Shown here: positions 28,737 through 60,288 of the stretch, in pieces
Position numbering within the stretch: the first letter of the stretch is position 1
Layout: each line of letters opens with the position of its first letter
DNA from: Octopus sinensis
Lineage: Eukaryota
NCBI RefSeq assembly: GCF_006345805.1
Contig: NC_043005.1
Span: 77,686,001 to 77,750,000 of the forward strand
Length of the DNA: 64,000 nt
Reading direction: 5' to 3'
Made by a program: the position numbers and the translations under genes
Notes under the pieces: model-generated
The model's database searches: none
The model's input: only the letters and a program-made list of their open reading frames with translations
Told to the model about the DNA's origin: nothing

Positions 28737-29813
28737 TTATGTGTGTGTTAGTGTATTACAGGCACAATTGAAGTTTTTGATTTCCTCGTAAATAAGTCCT
28801 AACCATTCTATTTTGTTTAATTCCATAGTGGCATATCTGTCACAAAAACGTGGTGCATGCATAAAATCAGTCTGTTGGAAATGGTCTTCGAAGAAACAAT
28901 GTTTCATTGCATCGTCCACAGAGATTCGGTTATCTACGTCTAAATTAAATATTTGATCCAAAAGATTAAGTGTATCTTCATCTTTGGTATTAAAAAAAGT
29001 TGAGAAATCCTGCTTTACAAAAGTACCGTATTGTTTTATCATAGCAACAGCTTCTTCACAAGTAAATTTCTTTAGCATTTCATAATCCGGTGTTCCGACA
29101 AGACATAAGATCTGCTTCATTTGGTCAGAGAAATTATGCCCCCGTATCACAGCTCGTTTTGTTAACATTTCACCCAGGATACAACCCACAGACCACACAT
29201 CGGCTGTCTGATTGTATTTTTCCCAGTTAAGGATTATTTCTGGAGCTCGGTACCATCGGGTTTGCACATAACCCGTCATTTTAAGACTGACCTGTCGGGC
29301 CAGGCCAAAATCCATAATTTTGATGCAGTTATCAGCAGTAACCCCGATGTTGCTGGGTTTCAAATCACGGTGGATGACCCCGGCTGAATGAATATAATAA
29401 AGTCCACAGAACATTTGGTAGACCAGGGACTTGATGAGGGGTAACCCCATCTCCTCGCTGTCCAACATCATTTTTAAATCTCTCGGATAGAATGTGGAAA
29501 CAAGGTAGAGATTATCCAAATCATTTTTACATATTGCTGTTGTAAATGTATCGAGCAGATCGATAACATTTTTGTGTTTCATGTGCTTTAGCAAACATAT
29601 TTCGCGGTATGTACGTTTAGTGTCCATTAACGTGACAAACGGCCGCGACAGTTTTTTGATGGCCACTGTGGAGTTCGTAAGTTTGTTATGAGCCATTGAC
29701 ACATGGCTGAAACTGCCTCCTCCTATATATTCCAAACAACTGTAATAGTTTGGATGCATCCATTTAATACCGAATTCCTCGGTGACTTCGAAGGACGCTG
29801 GGATGTTATCCAT
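28737..29813 (-). CDS. Intronless divergent p38-family MAP kinase, copy A (358 aa)
   Basis: Uninterrupted ORF with VAIK, RE (alphaC Glu), HRDLKPSN, DFGLAR-x6-TGY-V-Q-TRWYRAPE, DVWSVGCI and the C-terminal EW..LIYEEI helix, collinear with p38. Orthology to a named p38 gene is not established. Confidence 0.93.
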   Translation of the reverse strand: MDNIPASFEVTEEFGIKWMHPNYYSCLEYIGGGSFSHVSMAHNKLTNSTVAIKKLSRPFVTLMDTKRTYREICLLKHMKHKNVIDLLDTFTTAICKNDLDNLYLVSTFYPRDLKMMLDSEEMGLPLIKSLVYQMFCGLYYIHSAGVIHRDLKPSNIGVTADNCIKIMDFGLARQVSLKMTGYVQTRWYRAPEIILNWEKYNQTADVWSVGCILGEMLTKRAVIRGHNFSDQMKQILCLVGTPDYEMLKKFTCEEAVAMIKQYGTFVKQDFSTFFNTKDEDTLNLLDQIFNLDVDNRISVDDAMKHCFFEDHFQQTDFMHAPRFCDRYATMELNKIEWLGLIYEEIKNFNCACNTLTHT

Positions 29814-30849
29814 TGGATCTGTTTCTCTTCTCAGCGCCTTTATAATTAGTTACAAATCCGAGAAAGTATTACGCGATGTCTCCTCTCTCCAGCTTTCATA
29901 ACAATTATGAGCAGAGGCGAACGAGATGACAATATTTATAACGTTAGCCTCGAAGATAACGGGAAAAACTATATTTCCCCGAGAATTATTGATGTTCTAT
30001 AAATAGCTGAATTCGAAGAAAGCATGTTAGTTTTCATGTTAACACGTGTTTTCTTATTTAGATGTATATTTACTAACCACGAAATATATTTCGCTGATTA
30101 TAAAATATTCTATTAAATATAAAAAGAAAAAAAAATCGTTCAAAGTTTGCGTACTTCATTTATAATGACCTAGATATTCAATTTCGTTAATTTAAATATT
30201 ATATATTGTTATATCATATTATATTATGTTATACTATAGAAGAAAGTTCTTTATTACAATTCATTTAATTTTTTGTAGGCTCTAAGTGTGCAAGCTATGA
30301 CCTTAAGGGAGATGTGATTACTATTTTTAGCAAGTCAAGCACACACGTAGAGGCCTCCATCTCGGTTCAAGAATGAAAAAACGCATTAAGTTCTGTAAAA
30401 CAATTATGTGCATAATATAAAACAACCGAGTGTGCATTAAATGAGGTAGTGCTGCTATTTCTAGCAAGTAAAGCAGCCACGTAGAGATTACAAGTTTTCT
30501 ATATTGAATGAATAATAACGTGGGAGAGCTTTACATATTTTATTTTGTTAGAAATAGCAGTAAAATTTTACCACAATTGACATTTTTTTTTTATTAACGC
30601 AAAAGAGAAAGAGAAAAAAGATATTAGACAATGTTGTTCCCGATGGAATGGACACGACTGGACTCTGATCACAAATTTAGACATAAATATGCAAAACAAC
30701 TCACAAATTTTATGCCTAAATCCGGGTCCAGTTTCATCCGCAATTTAGGGGTCGGGAAACCAGAATAAAATATTTACAAAATTCAAAAGAACGTGTCCGA
30801 TTTTTTTTTACACATGCGCGCGCCGATGCACAAAAGCAACCTTTTATCT

Positions 30850-30972
30850 AGAGGGCTCCAACCATGACTATCCTGATTTTTTAAAAGCGTTCCAACTGTG
30901 ACCATCCAGTCTTTTCCTAAAGCCTTAAAACTGTAACTAGTCTTTTTTTAAGCGCTCCGACTGTGACCATCA
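30850..30972 (+). repeat. Short fragment of the ccaactgtgaccatcc minisatellite followed by TTAGGG-like repeats
   Basis: Three motif copies, then agggttagggttagg at about 30976-30990. Confidence 0.7.
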
Positions 30973-31782
30973 CCAGGGTTAGGGTTAGGTTTAGCGTTAC
31001 TATTATTGCAATGCACTTAATTATAGCAGCTGGATTGAGATCGCCAAGAAGTTAAATAACAAGACGGTTACTGGATATGCTAGAAATAACAGCCAAATCA
31101 TTACTGAAATGCCTTTGATCATAGGGGTCAGTCGAGTTAAGGGCATGTCATTAGTTATTTGTTGTTTAGCCTCGGATCAAGTCAGGTCAAGTCGGGTAGG
31201 GTCTGATACTGCTAACCAATGATCAAACGAACCCCATGAGATTTCTAGTTTTTTTTTCCTTTTTCTTTCTTTAATTTTTGTTTCTTTTGAGGAAATGGTG
31301 TATTATATTAAAACTAGAATACGCGTGTCGGCAAAATTACCGGCCTTTTCGTTCAATGTTAGAAAATGGCACATGAACGCAATGGGGAAAACACATTAAT
31401 AGATGTCAGTTATCTAGTAAATTTGTGTTCATTCTCAGAATTGAAGCACCTGCTCAATCAGATACGATTGCAACGGCTCGGTTGAAAATATCACCCACAT
31501 AATGCATGTTTGTGTATACACACACACACACACGTACGCGCGCGCACGCATGTACACAGACATATATATATACATATGTGTACATATAAACATGCATACA
31601 CACACACACGCACGCATATGTACACAAGTAAACACACACATATATATATATACACACAGACATATAATATATACATATATGTGTACATATAACTACATAT
31701 AAACATACATACATATACACACACGCATATTTTTTTTTTCAAACTTACTTGTTTCAGTAACTTGAATGCGGCCATGCTGGAG

Positions 31783-31834
<52 letters not shown>

Positions 31835-31842
31835 AAATATGT

Positions 31843-32100
31843 GGAGGCGCAATGGCCTAGTGGTTAGGGTCGCAGGATCGCGGTTTCGATTCCCAGACCG
31901 GGCGTTGTGTGTGTTTATTGAGCGAAAACACCTAAAAGCTCCACAAGGCTCCGGCTGTACTCTTTCACCACTCTTTCTTCTGTTGGCCTGCTCGCTTAGC
32001 CAGCGGGGTGGCGTCATTCGAAGGCTAAAACAATGCGAACGCATTGTGACCAGCCATGTGTAACAACATCTGATGGTCTGGTCGGTCACGTGATCACGTG
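31843..32100 (+). mobile_element. tRNA-headed SINE family C (short variant)
   Basis: ggaggcgcaatggcctagtggttaggg (A box), ggtttcgattccc (B box); the head is shared with 35098-35480. Confidence 0.8.
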
Positions 32101-32269
32101 ATATATATATATATATATATGTGTGTGTACATATAAATACATATGAACATACATATATGCACACACACACACACACACACATTCTCTTATATGTATTAGT
32201 CCAATGACTGTGGCCATGCTGGAGCACCGCCATTGTAATCATCTTTCCACTTTCCACCTTTGGTGAAGG

Positions 32270-32590
32270 ATGGAGTTCGATGGAGTTCCACCTTCTGGTG
32301 AAGGATGGAGTTCGATGCTACTGCCCTATCTTGCTTAGATATTGGCTCATCCAGGATCTCGGCGAGCCAGTTCACGTTTGAAAACGTCTACATCCACTCC
32401 ATGGAGGCAGGCTCCTGAGATGCTTCGACAGACAGTTGAACAGCTGTGGGCCCTTGAAACCCAAGCTATTGCAGTACATCGTCCTTGCCCAAGATGAAGT
32501 AGTCGGCACAATGGAGACAGCACAGTGACGTCCTGTTCGTGGTCTGGTATAGCTCTTTATTCCAAAGTTCGGTACCAGTATTTTCCATAT
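32270..32590 (-). mobile_element. CR1-group LINE 3' fragment (family of 14839-15360)
   Basis: IWKILVPNFGIKSYTRPRTGRHC...YCNSLGFKGPQLFNCL. Confidence 0.8.
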
Positions 32591-32734
32591 ATACATATAT
32601 GTGTGTGTGTGTATGTGTGAGAGAGAGAGAGCAAAGGACGTCACGAAAAATGTACAGCAAATATGTACACAATATGTACACAATGTACAATGTACATCTT
32701 ATATTAAAGTTTTTAATACTTTTTGATAGTTTTT

Positions 32735-33138
32735 ATCTTTTACTTGTTTCAGTCATTTGACTGCGGCCATGCTGGAGCACCGCCTTTAGTCGAGCAAATC
32801 GACCCCGGGACTTATTCTTTGTAAGCTCAATACTTATTCTATCGGGGACTTTTGCCGAACCGCTAAGTGACGGGGACGTAAACACACCAGCATCGGTTGT
32901 CAAGCAATGCTAGGGGGACAAACACAGACACACAAACATATACACACATACTTACATATATATATACATATATACGACAGGCTTCTTTCAGTTTCCGTCT
33001 ACCAAATCCACTCACAAGGTATTGGTCGGCCCGGGGCTATAGCAGAAGACACTTGCCCAAGATGCCACGCAGTGGGACTGAACCCGGAACCATGTGGTTG
33101 GTTAGCAAGCTACTTACCACAAAGCCACTCCTGCGCCT
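32735..33138 (-). mobile_element. SINE family A, young subfamily
   Basis: Shares variants (ggggctatagcagaag, aagatgcc) with the copies at 41050, 43486 and 44795. Confidence 0.9.
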
Positions 33139-33223
33139 AAAATAAAAAAAATAAATAAAAAATAAATATATAATTGAATAAATAAATAAAAAAATTTTAA
33201 AATAAAAAATAAAAAATTTTAAA

Positions 33224-33259
<36 letters not shown>

Positions 33260-33438
33260 TTATAAGTATAAATTAATAATTTAAAATTTTTTTTTAAATT
33301 TTAACTTTAAATTTAAATAATTTAAATTTTGAATTTTATATTTTATATATTTTGTATATTATATTAATTAATTTTATTTCTATGTTTTGGTTTATGTTTT
33401 TCACTGTTTGATTTGCCTAATAGTGGTTTTATCTCTAA

Positions 33439-33494
<56 letters not shown>

Positions 33495-33699
33495 ATAAAT
33501 GTGTACATATAAATACATATAAACATATTTATACACACATACACACACACGTATGTGTACATATATAGGCCACCACGAAGTACAGTGTCTGAGGAGAGTC
33601 ATTCTGTTTTAATGCATTATCAATTAACACACGCACCGGTTCGATTTCCACTCATTTATTTTTTGCTCAAACTTTTGTTGCTGTTTGCACTCTCTTCAA

Positions 33700-33990
33700 T
33701 AGTAATTGAAATGTCAGTGAGAAGAATGATTGCACATGCAATAGGGGCTAGCATAAAAACCACCTTGAAGAACCACATAGTAAAGTTTAACAGGAAACTA
33801 TAGATGCTGGTTCAAGGTGTAGCCATTGGTGTCGGTGTGGTTGGAGAAGTGTGGCCGGCCTCTTCATGACCTGGCGGGGCAGAAAACTTAAACAATCCTA
33901 GCTGAAGAATCCACAACTGTTTTGCTTTACTGTAGGTATGTAGATGACATTAATATTCTAGTTAGGACAGACTCTAGTAACTGTAGTGTA
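33700..33990 (+). pseudogene. Penelope-like RT remnant
   Basis: TLKNHIVKFNRKL*MLVQGVAIG (cf. F.FNG..Y.Q..G.AMG) and YCRYVDDI; deleted between the two motifs. Confidence 0.6.
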
Positions 33991-34295
33991 GACAGAGAGG
34001 AGAATAATGGAGAGCATCCAGCTCATAAAAACGAGAGTCAACGACTATTGAAGAGGCTGCAAGAAGCAAAGAAACTTTTAGAAAATATGAGTGGAAATCG
34101 AACCGGTGGGTGTGTTAATTAATAAGACATTCAAACAGAATGACTCTCCCCAGACACAATAAAATATGCTTCAATACACGAATTCACAAAGAGAATTTGC
34201 AAACTAATTACAAAAACGATATATATATATATATATATATACGTTTAAATATTTGTTGTGCAAGATTTTTTATGTGAAGTCGTGTGTTGAAACAG

Positions 34296-34730
34296 ATATT
34301 GTTGTATTTAGGAATGGTCATTTTGCCAGTTTAGCCAATAAAAACACACGCACTATATATTTGGTGTTACTTTGCTTCAGTGTTATTTATTTTTTACATT
34401 AATCTTAATCTTATTTCGGCCAGAGTTCTTTCGTCACACTCCTGTGACCGCATCAGTGGTCCTTTGTTTTCTTCTTACTTATTTGTGTCTCTCCTTACTA
34501 ACCGTCAGCCATTTTCAGAAAATGGTTAGTAAGGAGAGACACAAATAAGAAAGAAGAAAAGAAAGGACCACTGATGCGGTCACAGGAGTGTGACGAAAGA
34601 ACTCTGGCCGAAATAAGATTAAGATTAATGTAAAAAATAAATTACACTGAAGCAAAGTAACACCAAATATATAGTGCGTGTGTTTTTATTGGCTAAACTG
34701 GCAAAATGACCATTCCTAAATACAACATAT
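34296..34730. repeat. Near-perfect palindrome of about 430 bp from an inverted Penelope-like terminal repeat
   Basis: Arms of about 205 bp with about 3 mismatches; each arm carries a hammerhead-like motif (34565-34609 plus, 34418-34462 minus). Confidence 0.85.
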
Positions 34731-34742
34731 ATATATATATAT

Positions 34743-34813
<71 letters not shown>

Positions 34814-35097
34814 TTGTATTTCGGGATGGTATATATTATTCGGGGGAGCAACTTTTTTTTATCGAAAGTGTATAAGTTATTAAATGATCGAAATACAAAA
34901 CTAGAAAAACAGTCAACAACTGATAAAGGGTCGTTCTTTATGTTGTTTGTTTTGTTTTCCATTTGTGTCTTTCGTTGTTCGAAAGAATAGTTTATGTTCC
35001 ATGTATTTGTGCTTCGCACATTTTTGCTGTACATTTTTCGTGGCGTCATTTGCTCTTTCTCTCTCACACATACACACACACACATATATGATGGATG

Positions 35098-35480
35098 GAA
35101 GCACTCCGTCGGTTCCGACGACGAGGGTTCCGGTTGATCCGAATCAACGGAACAGCCTGCTCGTGGAATTAACGTGCAAGTAGCTGAGCACTCCACAGAC
35201 ACGTGTACCCTTAACGTAGTTCTCGGGGATATTCAGCGTGACACAGAGAGTGACAAGACTGGCCCTTTGAAATACAGGTACAACAGAAACAGGAAGAAAG
35301 CGTGAGAGAAAGTTGTAGTGAAAGAGAGTACAGCAGGGATCACCACCATCCCTGCCGGAGCCTCCTGGAGCTTTAGGTGTCTTCGCTCAATAAACACTCA
35401 CAATGCCCGGTCTGGGAATCGAAACCGCGATCCTACGACCGCGAGTCCGCTGCCCTAACCACTGGGCCATTGCGCCTCCA
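35098..35480 (-). mobile_element. tRNA-headed SINE family C, full length
   Basis: Reverse complement starts ggaggcgcaatggcccagtggttagggcagcggactcgcggtcgtaggatcgcggtttcgattccc. Confidence 0.85.
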
Positions 35481-35696
35481 CACACACACATATATATATG
35501 GAAAAAAAAGTCAAGATAGAAAATGGTAAAATAATTTTATAAAAAACATTTCAGTACCGATTTCAGTCATTGAGACTTTTTCAACTGTAAGTATGGAAGA
35601 CAATTAAATTTTGGAAAAATTAGAAGAAAAGTTTTTTTAAAGAATATTTGCGCAGTGCTCAAATACAAGTGGTATTTTCTTTGTTTCTGCCTCCCC

Positions 35697-35774
<78 letters not shown>

Positions 35775-35849
35775 GGGGGAGATAGATAGATATTATATTT
35801 CGGGATGGTATATATATACACACACACACACATATTTCCTATCCTTCGC

Positions 35850-36030
35850 CAGACTGGACCGCTGAAATCTACAACTGTTTTTCATTCTCTCTCTGTTTAT
35901 TTTCTCTTATTGCTTTCTGTTTAAGAGCGTAGGCTCGAAACGTAAAGGAATTTTTCATTTTCCCAAGCGTCAACCTAATACGCTTGCTTGTTGTTCATAC
36001 ACCTGTCTTCGTCTTTTGTTTTTCTATAAA
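35850..36030 (+). mobile_element. Penelope-like terminal fragment with a decayed hammerhead-like motif
   Basis: tttCTGTTTA-A-GAGC-gtag-GCTC-GAAA-CGTA-aag at 35914-35947; the core has substitutions. Confidence 0.5.
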
Positions 36031-36398
36031 TTTCAACTATGTGTGTATGTGTGTTATATTTATACATATGCATACCTGTGTATGTACAATCTATACATGT
36101 AAATACAAATGCGTTTGTGAGTGCATGAATGTGTCTGTGTGTGCCCGTATGTTTGTTTACATTTTTAGATCAATAAAATCATTTTATTGTAACATATATG
36201 CCTCTTTTTGTGTGTGTGTGCATGTGAGAAATTCATAAACATAATCTTTCCTTAGCGTATTCAGAGCAAAGCCTTTAAATATTATCCACCTTCTTTAGTG
36301 CCTCTCACTGTCACCCACTCCCATTTTGTCTTGTTTTACGCTTCATTGCCCACAGCGTGACCGACGGGAACATAATATGCGTTATATTATATTAAAAG

Positions 36399-36798
36399 AC
36401 TAGCAGTATCGCCCGGCGTTGCTCGGGTTTGTAAGGGAAATAACTAAATAAGCATTTTTAGAGAGTTATAGCCAAAAAATAGCAAAAAAAAAATGCATTA
36501 AAAATGGAAGAAAAAATATGATAAATTTTTTTTTAAATCGCTGACTCATCGTAGACATTTTTAGAGTTACTTCCCTTATATAATAGCGAAAAAATGCATC
36601 AAAATGGAAAAAATGATGGTAAATTATTTTTAAAATCGTAGACTCATCGTAGACGCGCGCTAATACCCAGAAGGGCTCGATATGAATCACGACTATAAGA
36701 TACCCGCTTTTGGTTACACTGCACCGCAAAATGTGGGAGTAGTTAGGAATCTAAATCGTAGGAGACAGACACACAACTTCACTTTTATATATAAAGAT
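36399..36798 (+). mobile_element. Non-autonomous Helitron/Helentron-like element
   Basis: Same 5' 33 bp as 20064 and 38175; ends cacaacttcacttttatatataaagat. Confidence 0.7.
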
Positions 36799-37186
36799 TA
36801 GAAGATATAGCTTTGAAGGTGCATGGCTTAGTGGTTAGCGTGTTCGGCTCACGATTGTAAGGTCGTCAGTTCGATTCCTGGAGTTGTGTTTTAGTTCTTA
36901 GGCAAAACATTTTATTTCACGTTGCTCCAGTCCGCTCAGCTAGCAAAAATTAGTTGTAACTCTAATTCAAAAAGCCATCCTAGTAACATTCGGTGTCGTG
37001 TTGAATCTACCTGAGAGCTGCGTTAAGGGTTCACGCGTCTGCAGGGTGCTCAGTCACTTACATGTTAATTTCACGAGCAGGATGTTCTGTCGGTCGGCTC
37101 AACTAGAACACTCGTTGTTGTACGGGTGCTCGCCTGGAATGCCTTGAGAAATTGTGAATAGCCTCATTTGGAAACCAGAAGGTGTA

Positions 37187-37244
<58 letters not shown>

Positions 37245-37713: not shown

Positions 37714-37748
<35 letters not shown>

Positions 37749-49340: not shown

Positions 49341-49456
49341 TACAGCTTTGTAACCATGACCATCTCGCATTCCAAACATAGCCATCTCGTCTTTTTTAAA
49401 CCAAACACACACACACACACACGCACACGCACACGCACACACACACACACACACGC

Positions 49457-49487
<31 letters not shown>

Positions 49488-49970: not shown

Positions 49971-50098
<128 letters not shown>

Positions 50099-51078: not shown

Positions 51079-51239
51079 TAGCGCCTACTACATACGCGCC
51101 TAAAACAAGTGAATGTTTGTTGATGTGATACACTGCTTGCTATGCAGTCATGCGTGGCGAGCAGTGTATTTTAAATGAAATATGGAATTGTAGATTATAA
51201 GCAACAGGTAAACTCAATGCCATCTTTTTTATTAAAAAA

Positions 51240-52135
51240 AAGTGCTCCAGCCGTGGCCATCCATTTTGAAACCTTACAACTATGACCATATAATCTTTTA
51301 TAAAAAGCGCAGTACTGTGACCATTCTTTCCTTTTTATATTATAACCATCACCAAAACTGTTTTTTAAACGCTGTCCAACTGAGACAATCCATGCTTTTT
51401 AAAATCTTATAACCATAACAATAGTCTTTTGAAACAGATGTTCCAGCCGTGACCATCCACACATTTAAAAAACCTTATAACCGTGACAGAGTCTTTTTAA
51501 AAGACGCTCTACGACCAACCACCCTTTTAAATCATACCGTCGTTTGTAAAAGGCGCGCCAGTAGTGACCAGCTACTCATTGAAGACCTTATGACCGTAAC
51601 CATAGTATATTTTAAAAGACTGTAACCATCCACTCCTTTTGAAAACTTAACTGACAAATGGCAGCTTAAAAAAAAAACGCTCCAATTCTGACCATCCATT
51701 CTGTTTTATATCATAAACATAAACGGTTTTTTAAACGCGGTCTGTGACCATTTACACTTACTGAAACCTTATAACCGTGACAATAGTCTTTTATAAAGGC
51801 GCTCCAACTGTGACTATCCATTTTTTCAAATCGGATAACCGTCGTCATAAAAAGCGCTCCAACTGTGGCCATCCACTGTTAATAGTGACTACACCGTGCG
51901 ATCATGCACTCTTTTAAAAGTCTTGTAATTGTGATCATACTTTTTAAAGCCTTACAACTAACCATTGTCTCTTTTAAATGTGCTCCAACTGTGACCATCC
52001 ACTCGTATTCAAGTTTTATAAATCTGATCATACCGTCTTTTATAACGTTTTAACTGTGAACATATTGTTTTTAAAAAGCGCTACAACTGTGACCATCTAA
52101 TCTTTTTAAAGCATACCTACTGATTACCTGGTTAT
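51240..52135 (+). repeat. Second array of the ccaactgtgaccatcc minisatellite
   Basis: Same motif set as 48070-49340. Confidence 0.85.
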
Positions 52136-52331
52136 TTTTGTATAGCTTTCCAACCATGACCGTCCCACATTCCAAACATAGCGATCTTGTCTTTTTTAAA
52201 GCCAAACACGCAGTCTCGTTTTTACCTTTTGTTAATTATTACGTAATATATAGTCGAAAGTATACTTTGCCTGTAAAGTAAAGATGGAATGGCATGGATG
52301 GAATACTTTCGAACATAGGTCTCCGTTGGAT

Positions 52332-52569
52332 GAAGGCGGCGAGCTGGCAGAAACGTTAGCACGTCGGGCAAAATGCTTAGCAGTAATACGTCTGCCGTTA
52401 CGTTCCGAGTTCAAATTCCGCCGAGGTCGACTTTGCCTTTCATCCTTTCGGGGTCGATTAAATAAGTACCAGTTACGCACTGGGGTCGATATAATCGACT
52501 TAATCCGTTTGTCTGTCCTTGTTTGTTCCCTCTGGGTTTAGCCCCTTGTGGGTAGTAAAGAAATAGGTA
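52332..52569 (+). mobile_element. Young family-B SINE with a 10-bp TSD
   Basis: tccgttggat / tcagttggat flanks; empty site at about 49600. Confidence 0.9.
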
Positions 52570-53059
52570 TCAGTTGGATTCAGAACTAACCTGTCTTTAA
52601 ATAAATGTCTTGACTACAACACTGTGCAAATCCCCTTTTCGACGTTGATTTTTTTTTTTTTTTCAAATTTTGCTAGTATTACTCATTGGACTGCGGTCAT
52701 ACTGGAGCACCGGGTCGAAGGGTTTAACCGAACAAATCGACTTCGGATATTGTTTGTTTTTCGTTGTTTTTCTTTTCTCTGAAGTTTGGTGCTTTTTCTG
52801 TCGGAAGCTTTTTGGCGAACCACTAAATTACGGTTCGCACTGGTTTTCAAGCGGTTGTGGGGGCAAAAAAACCATAAATATGTTTCCTTGTTTATGTGTG
52901 TGTGTGCGTGTTGGAGAAATTTAATCATAACCAATTCTGACTGAGGGTGCTGAATCGCATCTATATTGCTAGAAATAAGAGTTAAAACCCTTCAAACTGC
53001 ATAAACGCACATTTATATACACTGACAGGGGGAGATAACCACCATATGAGCAAAGATGG

Positions 53060-53109
53060 AAACAGCTGACTAGTTTCGCCTGTTAATCGCAGGCTCCTCA
53101 GCAGTGTTT
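53060..53109 (-). ncRNA. Minimal type I hammerhead ribozyme candidate (Penelope-type)
   Basis: CUGAGGA-GCCUG-cgauuaa-CAGGC-GAAA-C-ua-GUC: complete catalytic core, 5-bp stem II and palindromic stem III (ACUAGU). Only the outer 5 bp of stem I pair. Confidence 0.55.
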
Positions 53110-53307
53110 ACCCCCGTTGCTCGGATCGTTCAGCTAAAACCACTGACAGTCTTTATGTTTACCATATAAAATTTACGGCTGATTTAGCGAAATACTTATG
53201 TGTATACTAAAAGTTAAGGCGATCCTTCGGTATAAATACACATGCGACTTTGTTTACATTTCTGAAGAAAACAGAAACCCTTTTCTCCCACCCCTAACGC
53301 TAAACCC

Positions 53308-53342
<35 letters not shown>

Positions 53343-53411
53343 CAAACACTTTCTTGAAATGTATCCGGTACTTATACCGAAGTTACGCCAAAATTAATAT
53401 AAGCAGCTAAG

Positions 53412-53758
53412 CGCAAACTCTGAGCACCTCTTCAAACTCCACCCATCTAACACCCGTGGACATATTTACAAAGTAAGAAAACAGCACAGCTCCCATGACT
53501 TCAGGAAACATTTTTTCACGCTGAGAGTTGCTGAAGCGTGGAACAAACTGCCGGCATCGGTTGTTAGTTGTCGGAGCACTGCATCCTTCAAAACTTCCAT
53601 GCTTCCTGAGATTCGCCAACACTACACTTGATACACACACAAGCATGTTCACTTTCCAGACATTTCTACATTACTGCATGTACTTTATATGCACTTTCTG
53701 ACAAGTTGTGGTGCACCTGAGCACTGTATACAATAATTTCATTATTATTATTATTATA
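53412..53758 (+). mobile_element. CR1/L2-group LINE 3' stub (family of 1854-2650) with (ATT)n tail
   Basis: Aligns with the reverse complement of 1880-2170. Confidence 0.85.
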
Positions 53759-54104
53759 AATTCATAACGGAAAAATTTAATCTTCACTAATTGTGCCTGA
53801 GGGTTCTGAATCGCACCTATATTACTAGAAATAGAAGTGAAAGCCCAGAAGCTGCATTAACGCACATTTGGTTTGGTCGGTCTGGGGCTATAGAAGAAGA
53901 CTTGCAAAGGTACCTATCGGTGGGACTGAACTCGGAGCCATGTGGTTGTGAAACAAATTTCTTACTACACAGCCATGCCTGTGTGCATGATGCCAACAGA
54001 ATTTAGAAAAGAAAAATAACAAAAGCTCGTGGTATGAATTCAGAGCTAGTGTCAAAATAAATAAATGGGTATTTTATTTTTCTGTTACACTTATCATATG
54101 AGAT

Positions 54105-57100
54105 AGGGGAACCCTAGCCTCAAGGGTCTACTAGAGAGCTTTGATCTAGTGGACCGTTACCGACTGGATGAGCCGAGCGTTCCACAGTGGACGTGGAGTA
54201 ACAACGACGGCTCACACAGATCGTATCTAGATAGGATATTTATTAAGAAAAGAGATAAGGATACGTTTAGTTGTCCACAATTTCATATTGTACCTTACTC
54301 GGATCACAAATTTGTGACGTGTAGGATGCAATTAGACAAGTGTCATAGACAGGGACCCGGGTACTGGAAGCTGAACAAGGCTATTTTGAATTGTGAAGAC
54401 TTCCGTACCCGGATTAAGGTGTTAGTTCAGAGGGCATTGTGTGGCACCATCATTAACAATAGATGGTGGCACGCCCTCAAAAGAGCCATTCGTTCAGAGT
54501 CCGTTAGATTTAGCAATCAGCTAAGGATAGATAGGGCTAGTCTAGAGGGCGATTTAGTTAAGAATCTAGACGAGGCAATGGAAGCTGGCTCTGCATCCGG
54601 AGTGTTGGCGGCAAGGACGGTATTGTACCGTCACCTTAACTCCAAACACGAAGGTTGCAGAGTCAGAGCTAAGCTACGCGCCGGGAAACGAGAAGGTATT
54701 AACGTGGCCGGATGGGCCCGTCGTGTGGAGAGTCAGAGAGGCAACAGAGCCTCAATCAAATCTTTGACTGACGAACAGGGACAAAAGATCTATGGACAGG
54801 AGGAGATGCAAAAGTTTCTTCACCAGCATTTCGCCCGCGTGTTCGGGGGTGGTGGTTCGCTGGATCGGGGGAGAGCCTTAAAGGACTTCCTAGCCGGCGG
54901 ACCGCGGCTCGCGGGGCGTGAGGTGGAGTGCTGTGAAGGAGCGATCACTCCCGCGGAGATAAAGGAGATACTGGCCGGATGCGCCGGGGAGAAGTCGCCG
55001 GGGTTGGATAGTCTGCCCTACGAGTTTTACCAAAGTATGCCGGACTTGTTCGGGGGAATACTGGCGGGCGTCTACACGAATTGGCAGCAGAATGGGAGAA
55101 TTCCCAGTTCTGTAAGCCGGGGAGTGGTGACGCTAATCCAGAAAGACCCGAGCAAGGGGGATAACATCAGTAACTACAGGCCCATAACTCTACTTAATGT
55201 AGAGTTAAAGATTTTGGCCAAGGTGTTGGCAAAAAGGTTGACGGTTGTCGTGGAGAAACTTGTAGGGAGAGCACAGACATGTGCAATTCCAGGCAGGTCG
55301 ATCCAGGACAACCTTCACCTTATACGCTACACCTTAGATAGGGTGGGTAAATTAGCCGGCAAAGGCGGGGTAATGGTCCATTTAGACCAAAGTAAAGCCT
55401 TCGATAGGGTAGACCATGGGTACCTGGCGACGGTCCTCGAAGCGGCTGGGCTGGGCCCTGAATTTCGCGGGTGGATCTCCGCTATGTATAGCGGCATCAA
55501 GTCCACCGTCCAGATAAACGGTTACCTAACGGAACCGTTTTCGATCGAGTGTTCAGTGCGTCAGGGGTGCCCCTTGTCACCACTTTTGTACGTATTGGCT
55601 CTTGAGCCATTGCTGCGAAAGTTGGAGAGGCTGGGGAGTAACTCGGATGAAATCGGAGGTGGGAGGACGGTTACTGCTTATGCGGATGACGTCACCCTCA
55701 TCGTGTCCAAAGAGGCCCAACTACCTTGTGTAGAGGAGGCTATCAGAGGATACGAGGCGGTGGCAGGAGCAAAGGTTAACAAGGACAAATCGGTTGGCTT
55801 GCGCCTCGAAACCTGGAGGAGCAAGTCGATATCGTCCAGTGTCGTGGGACACTGGACGGATGGCCCTGTTAAGTTGCTGGGAGTTTGGTTTGGGCCAGAC
55901 TCCCAAACGGAGAAGAACTGGAGTGAGGTGACAAGCAAGGTGGAAGCCATAGTACGGACCTGGTCCAGAAGGTTTCTGTCCTTGAAAGGAAAGGCGGAGG
56001 TGGTGCAGATGTTCATTGCATCTGTAATCACCTACCGCCTGACCGTTGTCCCTTGCCCCGATTCATGGCTTAACAAGTTGGAGCGAATCCTTTTCCGCTT
56101 TTTGTGGAAAGGAGGAAAGCCACTTGTGAGGCGCTCCGTTTGCTGCCAGGAACCGTTAAAGGGTGGGTTAGGAATGCCTTGGTTGATGATGCGCAGACAT
56201 GCGTTGAGGCTAAGGCATCTCTGGCACCACCTGGAAGGTGATAAGGTGTGGAGTCCGCTGGCAGGGGGATTTTTCCGAGACCGGCCTCCTTAGTGAATTT
56301 TAAACCCGGTTACATCAAAAGATGGAAACTGACTCCATGGCAAAAGGAGTGCCGACAGGCACTCACGCTGATCCACAAGGCGGGCAAGGCCGGCTGCGGA
56401 AATACCACCTCGGTATTTTATAGAGGGCTGGTAGAGGCAAAAAACGACGACGTCCTAGGAGGGGCTCTGGGGTTTGATGAAGACCAGCTTGCCAACCTGT
56501 TTAAAAAAACTTTCAGGTCGGGGTATTTGGATAATTTCCAAGATCCCTGGCCTGGCAGTGTTATAGGAATGCTTTACCTGTTCGCGAGAAGTTATCACGG
56601 CACGGAGTTTCAGTGCCACCGACGTGTCCAAGGTGCGAGTTGGACGATGAAACCGTCCAGCACGCTTTTGTTCACTGTCGGAAGTTGTCCGACTTGATAA
56701 GTTACGCAGAACACGTGTTATCGCATCTGGGACGAGTACAGCTGTCGGCTGAGTCTATGATTAAGATGATACCGTCAACTGGACTCTCGAAGGAAGGTGA
56801 GGCATGTTTTCACTGCACGGTTGCAGTAGTAAAGGAATGCGTGTGGAGAACGAGAATGGAAGGAGCCGCGATAGGATCCTTTGTCTCCGGCCCCAGCTTG
56901 CTCACTTACTTCAGATATCATCTGAAGAGCAAAATGGGGCTGGAAAAGAGGATCTTACCGCGGCGTGTGTATGAGAAAAGATGGAAGGAAGTGGAAAAAA
57001 AGGTGGGTGTCAGAAACCCAGCTTGACCATGGAGGAGAGAGAGGAAGTGGAAGCTGCAGGGCCTCATAAATTGCCGGGGTGTAGAGGCTCCAGTGAGATC

Positions 57101-57285
57101 ATAAGTCATGTACTGTGGTTTGTTCTACTAGGTCATGTAAAAGACATTTATTTTTATTTTTATAAATGAATAATTCAAATGTAAACGAAAATTTTTAAAA
57201 CGAATCTCTTAACTGTTTTTTTTTTTGCATGTATGTCCTGTATTTGTCCTTCTATGTGTGATTATATAATCATAATAAAGAAATA
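54105..57285 (+). mobile_element. 5'-truncated Tx1-like (L1 group) LINE, 3181 bp, with a 16-bp TSD
   Basis: Endonuclease end (SYLDRIF, SDHKFV, GYWKLN), RT (KSPGLD, YRPITLLN, LDQSKAFDRVDH, RQGCPLSPLLY, AYADD) and C-terminal CPRC..ETVQHAFVHC. Two frameshifts near 56260 and 56540. TSD acttatcatatgagat at 54089-54104 and 57286-57301. Confidence 0.93.
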
Positions 57286-57479
57286 ACTTATCATATGAGA
57301 TGGGTGTAGAAGAAATTGTAAAAAACTAACCGAAAATGAGCACGGAATTCGGGGTGGGTGAAACTTTATGTCAAAAAAAAAAAAAAATTCTTTCAGAGAG
57401 GGGAACAACCACCTAATTTCTTGCGCTTTTCCTTCTCCATGAAGTAGGGATAGCAGTTCCCGAAGTCCGTCGACAAGAG

Positions 57480-58626
57480 GGCATACCTATACAATTGTGC
57501 CCCGCCGCTTTTGTTTTCTTACAACTTCTAGGAAAATGAATATTTTTTCTCTTTTTAATGAAATTGTTTACAAATACGTTTCAGATGGGGGAAGATTGCT
57601 ATTATATCGGTATTTAATGTGAAATTTTTTTCGCAGGGTAACGCGGGGAGTTTCGGAAATTTCACAAAAATCAGTTTTGTTGCCTCATATCTTTTAGAAA
57701 AAATGGGTAATTTTTAAATGACATTTTCTTCAAAAACTTTTCAGAGTGTGTCAATTACAATTATATAAGAATTTAATATGAAAAAGAAAACTGGTGCACT
57801 CGTTCGTACCCATACATTTGATACATCACAATATTTTGTTTTTCCGAAATTTTAAGTTTCATTTTGTAGACATATTTTATATGTGTCGCTATATATGTGT
57901 ACTTTTTTGGGCAATCTTTCGTCTCTAGTAGACCTTTCCGTCGATTTCCGTAAAAAAAATTTTTTTTTTACATATGGGCTTGCGGGAACTTTTGAAGTAA
58001 TGAGAACGAAAGAGACTAAGAGAAAGCGATTGTATGACGAAGGAAGTTCTTTTGAAGTTACCGTGCATGTGAAGCATTGATGTACATGTGTGTGTGTGTG
58101 TGCGTGTGTGTGTGTGTGTGTTTGATGGGGTGTGGGAGACAGACAGTATGTTGTGTAAGTGAAGTGCTTCTGTTAGTGTGTGTGAAGAGACAGAGTAATG
58201 TGTGAAAGAAAGAGATAACTGAAATTTTTTACTCGCTGTATGTGTATATGTATGTATATTACTTCAAAAGTTCCCGCAAGCCCATATGTAAAAAAAAAAA
58301 AAAATTTACGGAAATCGACGGAAAGGTCTACTAGAGACGAAAGATCGCCCTTTTTTTTTTTCATATTTAATTCCGATATAATCGTAATCTACATATTTTG
58401 AAAGGTATTTGTTAAAGATTTCATCAAAATTATCCGCTTCTTTGAAAGTTGACAAAGCAAAGTCGATTCATTTTCTGTAGTTCTATCAACACAAATTCCA
58501 ATATAATCAGAATTTGCATCATCTGAAGCGTATTTGTAGAAAAATTCGTTAAGAAATATCCATTTTTCCGGAATTTATGAGGAAACAAAGTTGAAGCGGC
58601 GGAGAGCACAATTGTGTAGGTATGCC
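57480..58626. mobile_element. Older non-autonomous DNA transposon (GGCATACC termini) hosting a MITE
   Basis: Imperfect TIRs of about 70 bp (ggcatacctatacaattgtgc.ccgccgctt / aagcggcggagagcacaattgtgtaggtatgcc); candidate TSD gacaagag/gatcagag. Confidence 0.65.
57910..58349. mobile_element. MITE family M2
   Basis: Long TIRs; TSD cttttttg/cttttttt; matches 44130-44541. Confidence 0.85.
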
Positions 58627-59217
58627 GATCAGAGTTTGGTGACAGGTGTAAATAGTAAAAATTAACCTGAGTAGGTGTTTATAACAGGTTTTCTTTGTCA
58701 TGAAGTATTTATATTTTAATAGAATTAGTGAGAAAATACGTAACCTAGTAATTTGGTTGTTGAGTGGATGAACACAATGGAGGGTCCCATTCCTGCACAT
58801 GTGAAGATGTGAGGACCGAGAGGGTGTCTAGCGCCTACTACATACGCACCTAAAACAAGCGAATGTTTGTTGGTGATATCCTGCTTACTATATAGTCACA
58901 CCTTACGTCTGTTATATTTTAAATCAAATCTGAAATTGTTGGTCACATGGCAGGTAGACAATTTTCTTTTGTATATTTCCTGGTGACTTACAAGTTTCTT
59001 TCTGAATTACGTAATTTCTTTGATGTTTTGGGTTTTCTAATAGTTTGGGGAAATACTATTTCTCATGTTATCTTCTCAGCCTGAGTGAGTTATCGTTACG
59101 TCACTGCTTTGACAGTAGTAACTACCTTGACACCTGGACTATTTAAACACATCGCCCAGTACTTTTTTAGTGTGAACAACTAATTGTAAAAGTGCTGGAA
59201 AGAGAGAAACAGATACG

Positions 59218-60288
59218 ATGGCCGTTATCCCATCGTGCTTCCAACTCACTGAAGAATTCGGTATTAAATGGATTCACCCAGACTATTACAGTTGTTTGGA
59301 ATATATAGGAGGAGGCAGTTTCAGTAACGTGTCATTTGCTCATAACAAACTTACTGAATCGAAGGTGGCCATTAAGCAACTGTATCGGCCTTTCTCTTCG
59401 TTGACTACAACTAAACGTACATACCGCGAGGTCTGCTTGCTAAAACACATGAAACACAAAAATGTTATCGATCTGGTCGATATATTTACAACAGCAATAT
59501 GTAAAAATGACTTGGATAATCTCTACCTCGTTTCCACATTCTATCCGAAAGATTTGAAAACGATGTTGAAAAGCGAGGAGATGGGGTTACCCCTCATCAA
59601 GTCCCTGGTCTACCAAATATTCTGTGGACTCTATTATATTCATTCAGCCGGGGTCATCCACCGTGACTTAAAACCCAACAACATCGGTGTTACGTCTGAT
59701 AATTGCATCAAAATTATGGATTTTGGCCTGGCACGACAGGTCAGTCTTAAAATGACGGGTTATGTGCAAACCCGATGGTACCGAGCTCCAGAAATAATCC
59801 TTAACTGGGAAAAATACAATCAGACAGCCGATGTGTGGTCTGTGGGTTGTATCCTGGGTGAAATGTTAACAAAACAAGCTGTGATTCGAGGGCATAATTT
59901 CAACGACCAGGTAAAGCAGATATTATGTCTAGTCGGAACACCGGATTATGAAATGCTAAAGAAATTTACCAGTGAAGATGCTATGGATAGGATTAAACAA
60001 TTCGGAACCTTTGTAAAACAAGATTTCTCAACTTTTTTTAATACCACAGATGAAGATACACTTAATCTTTTGGATCAAATATTTAATTTAGATGTAGATA
60101 ACCGAATCTCTGTGGACGATGCAATGAAACATCGTTTCTTCGAGGACCATTTCCAAAAGACTGACTGTAAGCATGCGCCAAATTTTTGTGACAGATTTTG
60201 CGATATTGAATTGAACCAAATGGAATGGTTAGGACTTATTTACGAGGAAATCAAAGACTTCAACTCTAATACACAAACACACACATAA
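59218..60288 (+). CDS. Intronless divergent p38-family MAP kinase, copy B (356 aa)
   Basis: Intact ORF with all catalytic motifs (VAIK, HRDLKPNN, DFG, TGY, APE); about 51 substitutions and one 2-aa indel versus copy A by manual alignment. Confidence 0.93.
   Translation: MAVIPSCFQLTEEFGIKWIHPDYYSCLEYIGGGSFSNVSFAHNKLTESKVAIKQLYRPFSSLTTTKRTYREVCLLKHMKHKNVIDLVDIFTTAICKNDLDNLYLVSTFYPKDLKTMLKSEEMGLPLIKSLVYQIFCGLYYIHSAGVIHRDLKPNNIGVTSDNCIKIMDFGLARQVSLKMTGYVQTRWYRAPEIILNWEKYNQTADVWSVGCILGEMLTKQAVIRGHNFNDQVKQILCLVGTPDYEMLKKFTSEDAMDRIKQFGTFVKQDFSTFFNTTDEDTLNLLDQIFNLDVDNRISVDDAMKHRFFEDHFQKTDCKHAPNFCDRFCDIELNQMEWLGLIYEEIKDFNSNTQTHT

What the first reader, a model, noticed from the sequence alone, without database searches (positions are those of the whole stretch)
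28737..60288. Head-to-head pair of intact, intronless, highly derived p38-like MAP kinases: a candidate lineage-specific signalling subfamily
Seen: two full-length single-ORF kinases, about 85% identical, with all catalytic residues and a TGY loop of p38 length, surviving intact in DNA where every transposon ORF is broken. Established: canonical animal p38 genes are multi-exon and strongly conserved (e.g. GSGAYG loop, HDPDDEP C-terminal motif); these proteins depart from that pattern throughout. Inference: a retrocopy of p38 diverged rapidly, was kept by selection and then duplicated at DNA level, giving a p38 subfamily that may be specific to octopods or coleoids. This is the best candidate here for an undescribed system.
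Basis: partly seen in the sequence, partly recalled or inferred. Interest (0 to 1): 0.8.

Follow-up and report, generated by a model that had tools for sequence, protein, structure and literature searches.

The report
Octopus intronless p38-like kinase gene pair
Two intact, intron-free genes in this octopus DNA encode stress-kinase (p38-type) enzymes from a fast-evolving subfamily found so far only in octopuses, argonauts and cuttlefish; it has been kept by natural selection, but the proteins' partner-docking surfaces have changed.

Summary
The window is Octopus sinensis chromosome CM016867.1:77,686,001-77,750,000. It holds two complete single-ORF kinase genes, A (28737-29813, minus) and B (59218-60288, plus). 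They are divergently oriented, 29.4 kb apart and 85% identical in protein.

Both genes are p38-type MAP kinases:
- PDB best hits are p38 beta/alpha, E about 1e-89.
- The AlphaFold model matches p38 alpha at TM 0.90.
- All catalytic and phospho-binding residues and the TGY loop are present.

They belong to a monophyletic family (100% bootstrap) seen only in coleoid cephalopods. The family has two old subclades, I and II, each with octopod and cuttlefish members. All twelve coding sequences examined are single uninterrupted ORFs.

A third member, of subclade II, lies 54 kb from A, outside the window. This II-I pairing is also found in Argonauta.

Selection is purifying:
- A versus B: dN/dS 0.27.
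- A or B versus Argonauta: 0.07-0.12.
- Subclade II: 0.03-0.05.

Sepia esculenta transcribes both subclades as unspliced mRNA.

Three things remain unshown: expression of A and B themselves, the parental multi-exon p38 gene, and the retroposition event. The genes already carry automatic annotations (MAPK14, HOG1-like), but no paper found describes the subfamily. Interest is moderate.

The parts
28737..29813 (-). Gene A: complete intronless CDS (358 aa plus stop) of a subclade-I coleoid p38-like MAP kinase. It is the positional orthologue of the Argonauta subclade-I gene that lies tail-to-tail with the subclade-II gene.
   Evidence: ORF. Pkinase match. p38 beta/alpha at E 1e-89. Model pLDDT 89 and TM 0.90 to phospho-p38 alpha. 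Exact match to O. sinensis CM016867.1:77,714,737-77,715,813. Synteny.
59218..60288 (+). Gene B: complete intronless CDS (356 aa plus stop), an inverted duplicate of A. Its protein is identical in O. vulgaris and O. sinensis.
   Evidence: ORF. 85% identity to A. Pkinase match. dN/dS 0.27. P0002 is found on two genome contigs. B-like partial models exist in O. bimaculoides.
29814..29980 (-). About 167 nt upstream of A that still aligns with the upstream flank of B. Probably the 5' UTR and/or core promoter of the duplicated unit. It contains a short block that also aligns with the Argonauta orthologues.
   Evidence: The gapped blastn block 28711-29980 versus 59047-60317 has 84.9% identity over 1284 columns.
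59047..59217 (+). About 171 nt upstream of B, homologous to the upstream flank of A.
28423..28736 (-). Downstream flank of A with patchy homology to the downstream flank of B. It aligns well for about 25 nt, then at about 62% between 28423 and 28657. A candidate poly(A) signal lies 134 nt after the stop.
60289..60666 (+). Downstream flank of B with patchy homology to the downstream flank of A. A candidate poly(A) signal lies 172 nt after the stop.
29981..59046 (.). 29-kb spacer between the two genes. It contains no further kinase sequence and is filled with SINE-like repeats, a 204-nt palindrome and a reverse-transcriptase ORF (54149-56293).
   Evidence: tblastn. Repeats. RVT_1 match.

Best explanation
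A and B are functional genes, maintained by selection. They encode catalytically competent MAP kinases of a coleoid-cephalopod-specific, intronless, fast-evolving offshoot of the p38 lineage.

Likely history (inferred):
- One intronless founder, most simply a retrocopy of the ancestral multi-exon p38 gene, arose before octopods and decapods split.
- It diverged quickly and duplicated locally into subclades I and II. These are still neighbours in Octopus and Argonauta.
- In the Octopus lineage the subclade-I gene was copied again as a short inverted unit of about 1.3-1.65 kb. This happened after the split from Argonauta and before O. sinensis and O. bimaculoides diverged. The result is the head-to-head pair A/B.

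Likely mechanism (inferred from sequence):
- The proteins are switched on by dual phosphorylation of the TGY loop by a MAP2K.
- They phosphorylate Ser/Thr-Pro substrates like p38.
- Their common-docking acidic patch, ED site, docking-groove helix, hinge and gatekeeper are remodelled. They therefore probably use a different set of activators, phosphatases and substrates from canonical p38. In effect this would be a rewired stress/immune MAPK branch.
For: Shown directly:
- Complete ORFs with all catalytic, phospho-threonine-binding and phospho-tyrosine-binding residues, and a TGY loop of p38 length.
- Best sequence and fold matches are p38. The nearest representatives in 1.84 billion proteins all carry the p38-type TGY loop.
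- The family is monophyletic at 100% bootstrap, with subclades I (82%) and II (84%). Each subclade contains an octopod group and a decapod group.
- All twelve coding sequences examined (eleven in genomic DNA, one in mRNA contigs) are single uninterrupted ORFs, from O. sinensis, O. bimaculoides, Argonauta hians, Sepia esculenta and an unnamed decapod assembly.
- Purifying selection: A-B dN/dS 0.27 at dS 0.29; A or B versus Argonauta 0.07-0.12; subclade II 0.03-0.05.
- Amino-acid changes fall on both branches, 14 on A and 23 on B. The probability of staying stop-free under neutrality is 0.002.
- Conserved linkage. In O. sinensis gene II (plus strand) lies 53.8 kb from A (minus strand). In Argonauta the same convergent II/I pair lies 5.1 kb apart.
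- Relatives are transcribed. S. esculenta larval RNA-seq runs carry full-length subclade-I mRNA (125 runs) and subclade-II mRNA (136 runs). The runs were matched to the species through PMC10141105, PMC10466719 and PMC10571815. The subclade-II RNA contigs are colinear with a contig assembled from short reads that the Sepia officinalis preprint (10.1101/2025.04.22.649952) used for genome depth-of-coverage analysis, taken here to be genomic DNA. In-frame stops lie 12-24 nt upstream of the ATG. One subclade-I transcript ends in a poly(A) tail.
- Family-invariant substitutions: G36S, G85D, T106S, hinge HLMG to T(F/Y)Y(P/S/T), and A184Q. In subclade I, D313 and D315 are lost and E160 is not conserved; D316 is invariant throughout the family.
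Against: - There is no direct evidence that A or B is transcribed. The 90% clusters of A, B and the Argonauta subclade-I proteins contain no member from read-archive (Logan) assemblies, while the decapod I, decapod II and octopus II clusters do. A search designed to find short transcript fragments returned nothing usable.
- The retroposition origin is inferred only from intron absence. No poly(A) tract or target-site duplication survives. No canonical multi-exon cephalopod p38 was recovered to serve as the parent.
- The neighbour-joining trees do not place the family inside molluscan p38. It sits on a long stem beside all animal p38, with 50-58% support.
- dS against Argonauta is saturated (1.5-2.3), so those dN/dS values are approximate.
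- The altered docking specificity is read from residues recalled from p38 alpha structural work. It was not measured.
Confidence: 0.7

Rival explanations
1. Retrogene replacement. The intronless family is not an extra subfamily but the only p38 that coleoids have. The ancestral multi-exon p38 was lost, and subclade II, the slower one, carries the canonical p38 role.
For: A search with Haliotis p38 listed 120 canonical p38 proteins from molluscs, annelids, brachiopods and arthropods at 73-78% identity. None was named as a cephalopod. No canonical cephalopod p38 appeared among the named hits to A either. Subclade II is under very strong constraint, dN/dS 0.03-0.05, and is widely transcribed in Sepia larvae.
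Against: Both lists are capped at 120 rows out of about 2,000 qualifying hits, and many rows are unnamed read-archive proteins. Absence from the list is therefore weak evidence. Even subclade II is only about 46% identical to canonical p38, which is otherwise 70-76% conserved across protostomes. Loss of the CD and ED docking residues would be hard to reconcile with keeping all canonical p38 partners.
Confidence: 0.15
2. A and/or B are silent or decaying processed copies, that is young pseudogenes that merely look intact.
For: No read-archive transcript contig encodes A or B. dN/dS between A and B (0.27) is higher than in subclade II. The surroundings are repeat-rich.
Against: dS between the copies is 0.29, yet both keep 356-358 codons without a stop or frameshift. 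The simulated neutral probability is 0.002 per copy, counting substitutions only. dN/dS is well below 1, and is 0.14 in the catalytic third. Changes are spread over both branches, 14 versus 23, rather than concentrated on one. A differs by only two residues between O. sinensis and O. vulgaris, and B is identical. A-like and B-like copies also persist in O. bimaculoides.
Confidence: 0.05
3. The family is an ancient stress-kinase paralogue, older than molluscs, that was lost everywhere except in coleoids and lost its introns secondarily. On this view it is not a derivative of the molluscan p38 gene.
For: In both trees the family branches outside the canonical animal p38 group rather than inside Mollusca.
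Against: Support for that placement is only 50-58%, and the stem is very long, which is the classic setting for long-branch artefacts. The exhaustive representative search found no related cluster in any other organism. The family shares the p38-specific TGY motif, loop length and RWYRAPE segment, not the RYYRAPE of JNK and Hog1. This history also needs many independent losses plus complete intron loss.
Confidence: 0.07

Closest known systems
Canonical animal p38 MAP kinases (MAPK14/11/12/13; invertebrate p38a/b)
   Same: Same length and same fold (TM 0.90 to phospho-p38 alpha). The alignment is colinear over residues 17-349. The TGY dual-phosphorylation motif sits in a loop of identical length. 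All catalytic and phospho-residue-binding positions are conserved, as are W197 and the C-terminal L16 helix.
   Different: Only 41-46% identical to canonical p38, whereas canonical p38 proteins are 70-76% identical across protostomes. The coding sequence is intronless; animal p38 genes are multi-exon (human MAPK14 from background knowledge; scallop p38 has at least 8 exons, PMC8356821). Glycine-loop G36S. Gatekeeper T106S. Hinge HLMG replaced by T(F/Y)Y(P/S/T). A184Q after the TGY. The CD acidic patch is reduced to D316 in subclade I. E160 of the ED site is not conserved. The alpha-D/alpha-E docking-groove residues are changed.
Functional retrogenes and retrogene replacement (for example amphioxus SYCP1, PMC5803294; mammalian and Drosophila kinase retrogenes)
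   Same: A single-exon copy of a normally multi-exon gene that evolved faster than the parental type, stayed under purifying selection, and was then duplicated locally.
   Different: No hallmark of retroposition (poly(A) tail, target-site duplication) is preserved, and the parent gene was not identified here. The event is very old, pre-dating the octopod-decapod split, and it produced a multi-member family rather than a single copy.
Lineage-specific p38 duplicates in other invertebrates (Drosophila p38a/b/c; C. elegans pmk-1/2/3; the second Aplysia p38 seen here, P0021)
   Same: Extra p38 paralogues that arise within one lineage, often sit close together on the chromosome, and include a faster-evolving member. 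Aplysia P0021 and P0054 share one 586-kb contig, and P0021 is only 59% identical to Haliotis p38.
   Different: The coleoid family is more divergent (41-46%), is entirely intronless, and has lost most of the docking acidic patch. The comparison with the fly and worm genes rests on background knowledge and was not tested here.

Membership tests
p38 MAP kinase subfamily | Eukaryotic protein-kinase fold with the MAPK insert and the C-terminal L16 extension | tested here: met
   Pkinase matches profile positions 2-263 of 263. The AlphaFold model has pLDDT 89.2 and pTM 0.89, with helices at 244-273 (insert) and 334-356 (L16). Foldseek top 48 hits are all p38 alpha, TM 0.83-0.90.
p38 MAP kinase subfamily | Thr-Gly-Tyr dual-phosphorylation motif in an activation loop of p38 length | tested here: met
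   MTGYVQTRWYRAPE aligns without a gap to canonical MTGYVATRWYRAPE in A, B and 9 of the 11 family rows in the alignment. The two Argonauta proteins at the II-I locus (P0004, P0125) have a one-residue insert.
p38 MAP kinase subfamily | Catalytic and phospho-site-binding residues (K53, E71, HRD, N155, DFG, R67, R70, R149, R173, R186, R189) | tested here: met
   R70, E71, K53, H148-R149-D150, N155, D168-F169-G170, R173, R186 and R189 are invariant across 27 family and canonical sequences. R67 is conserved in at least 90% of them and is present in A and B.
p38 MAP kinase subfamily | Closest known relatives are p38 rather than JNK, ERK or Hog1 | tested here: met
   All 60 PDB sequences shown are p38 beta or alpha, E 1e-89 to 7e-87. 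The nearest representatives in the exhaustive search carry AR(H/Q)xxxEMTGYV(A/V)TRWYRAPE. TEY, TPY and Hog1-type loops appear only further down the list.
p38 MAP kinase subfamily | Common-docking (CD) acidic patch D313/D315/D316 and ED site E160/D161 | tested here: not met
   In subclade I the segment HDPDDEP is HFQQTDF (A) or HFQKTDC (B), so only D316 remains. E160 is A, S, V, E or H across the family. The identity of the defining residues comes from background knowledge of p38 alpha.
p38 MAP kinase subfamily | Phylogenetic position inside the animal p38 clade | tested here: inconclusive
   The family groups with p38, JNK and Hog1 (86%) and sits next to animal p38. It lies on a long stem outside the canonical group, with 50-58% support in neighbour-joining trees. 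No maximum-likelihood program was available.
p38 MAP kinase subfamily | Activation by MKK3/6-type kinases and stress-responsive phosphorylation of Ser/Thr-Pro substrates | not testable with these tools
   Needs biochemistry.
Functional retrogene | Intronless coding sequence while the parental gene type is multi-exon | tested here: met
   All twelve family coding sequences examined are single ORFs of 1071-1098 nt including the stop codon. Scallop p38 has at least 8 exons (PMC8356821). The multi-exon structure of human MAPK14 is background knowledge.
Functional retrogene | Identifiable parental gene elsewhere in the same genome | tested here: inconclusive
   No canonical cephalopod p38 appeared in the 120 rows shown by either search. 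The genome itself could not be searched.
Functional retrogene | Poly(A) remnant and target-site duplications at the insertion | tested here: not met
   None is recognisable downstream of A, B or the Argonauta genes. This is expected for an event of this age, so it is uninformative.
Functional retrogene | Purifying selection and transcription | tested here: inconclusive
   Selection is met (dN/dS 0.03-0.27). Transcription is shown for the Sepia esculenta subclade-I and -II genes and for another decapod subclade-I gene. It is not shown for A or B.
Processed pseudogene | Disabling mutations (stops, frameshifts) and dN/dS near 1 | tested here: not met
   There are no stops or frameshifts in A or B. 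dN/dS is 0.27. The neutral survival probability is 0.002.

The most novel reading that the evidence does not exclude
Coleoid cephalopods evolved their own branch of stress-kinase signalling. An intronless p38-derived family kept the TGY on-switch but lost the canonical docking patch. On this reading it is wired to different activators, phosphatases and substrates from p38 in all other animals. It may even have replaced the canonical p38 gene in this lineage. Within it, the octopod subclade-I copies A and B would be a rapidly evolving, tissue-restricted arm, for example immune or germline.
Probability: 0.2. Interest if true: 0.55.

Novelty: new variant of a known kind. Interest (0 to 1): 0.38.

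Why it matters
p38 is among the most conserved signalling kinases in animals. Here canonical copies are 70-76% identical from snails to insects. A whole cephalopod-specific family has dropped to about 42-46% identity. It keeps every catalytic residue but remodels the surfaces that choose partners. That makes it a natural experiment in how a MAPK module is rewired.

It also adds a signalling-kinase example to the short list of gene-family innovations specific to coleoids.

There is a practical consequence as well. Cephalopod transcriptome studies that report 'MAPK14', 'p38' or 'HOG1-like' by best BLAST hit may be measuring these paralogues rather than canonical p38.

The finding is not a new kind of system. 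The genes are already present, under generic names, in public annotations.

Tried and rejected
1. Looking for the parental canonical cephalopod p38. I searched with Haliotis p38. None of the 120 rows shown was named as a cephalopod, so the question stays open.

2. Looking for short transcript fragments of A or B. I searched the protein database with the C-terminal 134 residues. The tool reported 4 candidates and no scores, although full-length A finds itself.

3. Identifying the species behind read-archive runs by searching papers for run-accession prefixes. This worked for Sepia esculenta. It failed for the runs carrying P0005 and for the ENA assembly ERZ21867824.

4. Synteny beyond the kinases. 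tblastx of the Argonauta locus against the window and the O. sinensis subclade-II locus matched only the kinases and shared retroelements.

5. NCBIfam scan. It gave only sub-threshold bacterial kinase models and was uninformative.

6. Upstream footprinting between Octopus and Argonauta. One short block aligns about 150 nt upstream of the ATG. The alignment of such divergent AT-rich DNA is too weak to call it a promoter element.

7. ENA protein P0207. I considered it as a possible cephalopod canonical p38, but it comes from a different, unidentified assembly.

8. Literature searches for a description of the family or for its accession numbers found nothing.

Full report
**Where the window comes from**

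A 21,077-nt locus fetched for protein A from the Octopus sinensis assembly GCA_006345805.1 is base-for-base identical to the window. The window is therefore chromosome CM016867.1:77,686,001-77,750,000.

**Check of the observation**

The mechanical ORF list gives two long kinase ORFs: A at 28737..29813 on the minus strand (358 aa) and B at 59218..60288 on the plus strand (356 aa).
- They transcribe away from each other, with 29.4 kb between their start codons.
- The proteins are 85% identical with a single two-residue gap.
- The DNA forms a 1061-nt inverted repeat at 89% identity.
- tblastn finds no other copy or fragment in the window.
- Both match Pfam Pkinase over the whole profile.
- Both align colinearly, residues 17-349, with human p38 beta and alpha at E about 1e-89. 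All 60 PDB sequences listed are p38.
- In-frame stops lie 39 and 45 nt upstream of the two ATGs. The N-termini align with those of all relatives. No upstream coding exon is therefore expected.

The only quibble is that one transposon ORF in the window (54149-56293, 714 aa) still has a complete reverse-transcriptase domain.

**What the proteins are**

I aligned A and B with canonical p38 from vertebrates, molluscs, a brachiopod and a crustacean, and separately in a 27-sequence alignment. The following positions are conserved (p38 alpha numbering):
- K53 and E71;
- the HRD motif, N155 and the DFG motif;
- the T180-G181-Y182 motif in a loop of unchanged length;
- R67, R70, R149 and R173, which bind phospho-threonine;
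- R186 and R189, which bind phospho-tyrosine;
- the APE motif and W197.

R67 is conserved in at least 90% of the 27 sequences and is present in A and B. The others are invariant.

An AlphaFold model built on that alignment has mean pLDDT 89 and pTM 0.89. Its best structural matches are phosphorylated p38 alpha, at TM 0.90 and 43% identity. The proteins therefore have everything a MAP kinase needs to be activated by dual phosphorylation and to catalyse phosphotransfer.

The whole family differs from every canonical p38 at these positions:
- G36S in the glycine loop, and G85D;
- gatekeeper T106S;
- the hinge H107-L108-M109-G110, replaced by T-(F/Y)-Y-(P/S/T);
- I146V;
- A184Q, just after the TGY motif;
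- the FPG motif, lost;
- residues 124-129 of the alpha-D/alpha-E docking groove, changed;
- E160 of the ED site, not conserved;
- in subclade I, the common-docking patch, reduced from D313/D315/D316 to D316 alone.

That these positions form the docking and inhibitor-binding surfaces is background knowledge of p38 alpha, not something tested here. The inference is that catalysis and the on-switch are kept while partner choice has changed.

**The family**

A database search with A returned the following hits:

| Hit | Identity to A |
|---|---|
| O. vulgaris orthologue, annotated 'MAPK14' | 99% |
| B | 85% |
| two listed Argonauta hians 'HOG1-like' proteins (P0003, P0004; a third, P0125, is a cluster member) | 75% |
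| four unnamed groups from read-archive and ENA assemblies | 53-59% |
| a 364-aa protein of O. bimaculoides, O. sinensis, O. vulgaris and Argonauta ('HOG1-like', 'p38b-like') | 51-52% |
| canonical p38 of all animal phyla | 38-46% |

There is nothing intermediate between the last two groups. Canonical p38 proteins are 70-76% identical to each other across protostomes, whereas family members are 41-47% identical to them.

An exhaustive HMMER scan of 1.84 billion cluster representatives found a single full-length representative for the family. The next full-length hits were canonical TGY p38 at 43-46%.

Neighbour-joining trees give the family 100% bootstrap support and split it into two subclades:
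- subclade I: A, B, the Argonauta copies and a decapod group (82%);
- subclade II: the 364-aa octopod proteins and a second decapod group (84%).

I identified the decapod sequences through run accessions. Runs carrying the subclade-II protein P0134 and the subclade-I protein P0128 include SRR19578109, SRR20545812 and SRR23936181. These accessions fall within series that published papers list as Sepia esculenta larval RNA-seq (PMC10141105, PMC10466719, PMC10571815). One unnamed ENA assembly also contains a gene of each subclade.

The I/II split therefore predates the divergence of octopods and decapods, and the family is coleoid-wide. Nautilus could not be examined.

**Gene structure**

All twelve family coding sequences I could examine are single uninterrupted ORFs of 1071-1098 nt including the stop codon. 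Eleven are in genomic DNA and one is in mRNA contigs. They cover A and B, O. sinensis and O. bimaculoides subclade II, three subclade-I genes and one subclade-II gene of Argonauta, S. esculenta subclade II, two genes of the ENA decapod assembly, and the decapod subclade-I gene P0005.

In S. esculenta the RNA-seq contigs comprise a 105-200 nt 5' UTR, the CDS and 2.6 kb of 3' UTR. They are colinear at 99.7-99.9% with a contig assembled from run ERR12945500. The Sepia officinalis genome preprint (10.1101/2025.04.22.649952) used that run for genome depth-of-coverage analysis of this species, so I take it to be genomic DNA. If so, the mRNA is unspliced over that span.

Decapod transcripts have in-frame stops 12-24 nt before the ATG. 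One subclade-I transcript ends in a poly(A) tail 27 nt after the stop, preceded by ATTAAA.

Animal p38 genes are multi-exon (scallop has at least 8 exons, PMC8356821; the human genes from background knowledge). Intron absence across both subclades therefore points to a single intronless founder, and retroposition is the simplest explanation. No poly(A) remnant, target-site duplication or parental gene was found, so this step remains inference.

**Genomic arrangement**

In O. sinensis the subclade-II gene lies at 77,659,873-77,660,967 on the plus strand. That is 53.8 kb from A, which is on the minus strand, and about 26 kb outside the window.

In Argonauta hians the subclade-II gene (plus) and a subclade-I gene (minus) lie 5.1 kb apart in the same convergent arrangement. 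The Argonauta locus occurs on two contigs that differ by dS 0.005, so they are probably haplotigs.

A is therefore the positional orthologue of that Argonauta gene, and B is an additional inverted copy on its far side.

Homology between A and B runs from about 170 nt upstream of the ATG to about 25-30 nt past the stop, with patchy similarity to about +315 to +380. The duplicated unit was therefore only about 1.3-1.65 kb. That size fits either a small DNA duplication or a second RNA-mediated copy, and I cannot tell which.

Timing of the A/B duplication:
- dS between A and B is 0.29.
- dS between O. sinensis and O. bimaculoides is 0.17 (subclade II).
- dS between Octopus and Argonauta is about 1.5-2.3.
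- O. bimaculoides has both A-like and B-like partial gene models.

The duplication therefore falls after the Argonauta split and before the O. sinensis/O. bimaculoides split. Argonauta made its own extra subclade-I copy independently (dS 0.21, dN/dS 0.27).

**Selection**

Nei-Gojobori estimates:

| Comparison | dN/dS |
|---|---|
| A vs B, whole gene (dN 0.078, dS 0.286) | 0.27 |
| A vs B, N-terminal third | 0.26 |
| A vs B, middle (catalytic) third | 0.14 |
| A vs B, C-terminal third | 0.39 |
| A or B vs Argonauta subclade I (dS saturated) | 0.07-0.12 |
| decapod subclade I | 0.11 |
| subclade II | 0.03-0.08 |

Polarising the A/B differences with Argonauta assigns 14 changes to A, 23 to B and 14 as ambiguous. 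Neither copy is drifting freely.

When substitutions were simulated at half the observed dS, only 0.2% of copies stayed free of stop codons.

A differs by two residues between O. sinensis and O. vulgaris, and B by none.

**What is missing**

- I could not show transcription of A or B. The 90%-identity clusters of A, B and the Argonauta subclade-I proteins have no member from read-archive assemblies, whereas the decapod I, decapod II and octopus subclade-II clusters do. This hints at low or tissue-restricted expression of octopod subclade I, but absence from such assemblies is weak evidence. The search meant to catch short fragments failed.
- I could not find the canonical cephalopod p38. I therefore cannot exclude that the family replaced it.
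- The trees are distance-based with a long stem, so the exact origin within the p38 lineage is unresolved.

**Comparison with what is known, and novelty**

The proteins work like p38. They pass the fold, motif and nearest-relative tests. They fail the docking-patch test, and their phylogenetic nesting is unresolved. The gene history resembles that of functional retrogenes and of lineage-specific p38 duplicates in other invertebrates. Aplysia, for instance, has a derived second p38 on the same contig as its canonical one.

Public annotation already contains these genes under generic names. Four literature searches, including searches by accession number, found no description of a coleoid-specific intronless p38-like family.

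I rate the finding a new variant of a known kind, of moderate interest. It is a clean case of a highly conserved signalling kinase being copied, stripped of introns and rewired in one animal lineage. It is not a new type of system.

Noticed in passing
outside the window: O. sinensis CM016867.1:77,659,873-77,660,967 (locus L020 10001-11095): A third intronless p38-like gene (subclade II, 364 aa, annotated 'HOG1-like') lies 53.8 kb from gene A in convergent orientation. The same II/I pair is 5.1 kb apart in Argonauta hians (L022, L023).
   Followed up: yes
window 34300-34727: A near-perfect palindrome: two 204-nt arms at 99% complementarity, separated by a 20-nt spacer. It lies in the spacer between the two kinase genes. 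Its origin is unknown.
   Followed up: partly
window 24040-24237, 32737-33138, 38794-38991, 41058-41441, 42348-42748, 43487-43861, 44800-45242, 45833-46068, 62964-63208: Many copies, in both orientations and 81-97% alike, of a repeat about 150-240 nt long. It behaves like a SINE and fills much of the DNA around and between the kinase genes.
   Followed up: no
window 5923-7531: A long trinucleotide-repeat tract produces spurious 150-311 aa ORFs in several frames on both strands (runs rich in His, Asp, Val and Pro). They are not genes.
   Followed up: no
window 54149-56293 (+) and 10535-11623 (-): Reverse-transcriptase ORFs. The first is 714 aa with a complete RVT_1 domain. The second is a partial RVT_1. 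An element related to the second (64% aa over 489 residues) lies next to the Argonauta kinase locus (L023 7607-9073).
   Followed up: partly
L019 6001-7140 (ENA ERZ25072999, contig of 580,736 nt): A canonical-type p38 (379 aa, 72-74% identical to Haliotis p38) encoded as one uninterrupted ORF in an unidentified eukaryote. It looks like an independent case of an intronless p38 gene.
   Followed up: partly
window 29950-29980 and 59050-59085; L024 and L002 about 150 nt upstream of the ATG: A short upstream block (GGnnAAAT...TTTTCCCnCGTTA) aligns between A, B and two Argonauta subclade-I genes, even though synonymous sites are saturated. It could be a promoter or 5' UTR element, but the alignment is weak.
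   Followed up: partly
proteins P0021 and P0054 (Aplysia californica, same 586,220-nt contig): Aplysia carries two p38 genes on one contig, one of them derived (59% identical to Haliotis p38). Lineage-specific p38 duplication with one fast copy therefore also occurs in gastropods.
   Followed up: no
protein clusters of A, B and the Argonauta subclade-I proteins: No read-archive (Logan) contig encodes octopod subclade-I proteins. The cuttlefish subclade-I and subclade-II proteins are each found in more than 120 runs, and an Octopus subclade-II variant (P0143) is found on 4 contigs. This suggests low or restricted expression of A and B.
   Followed up: partly
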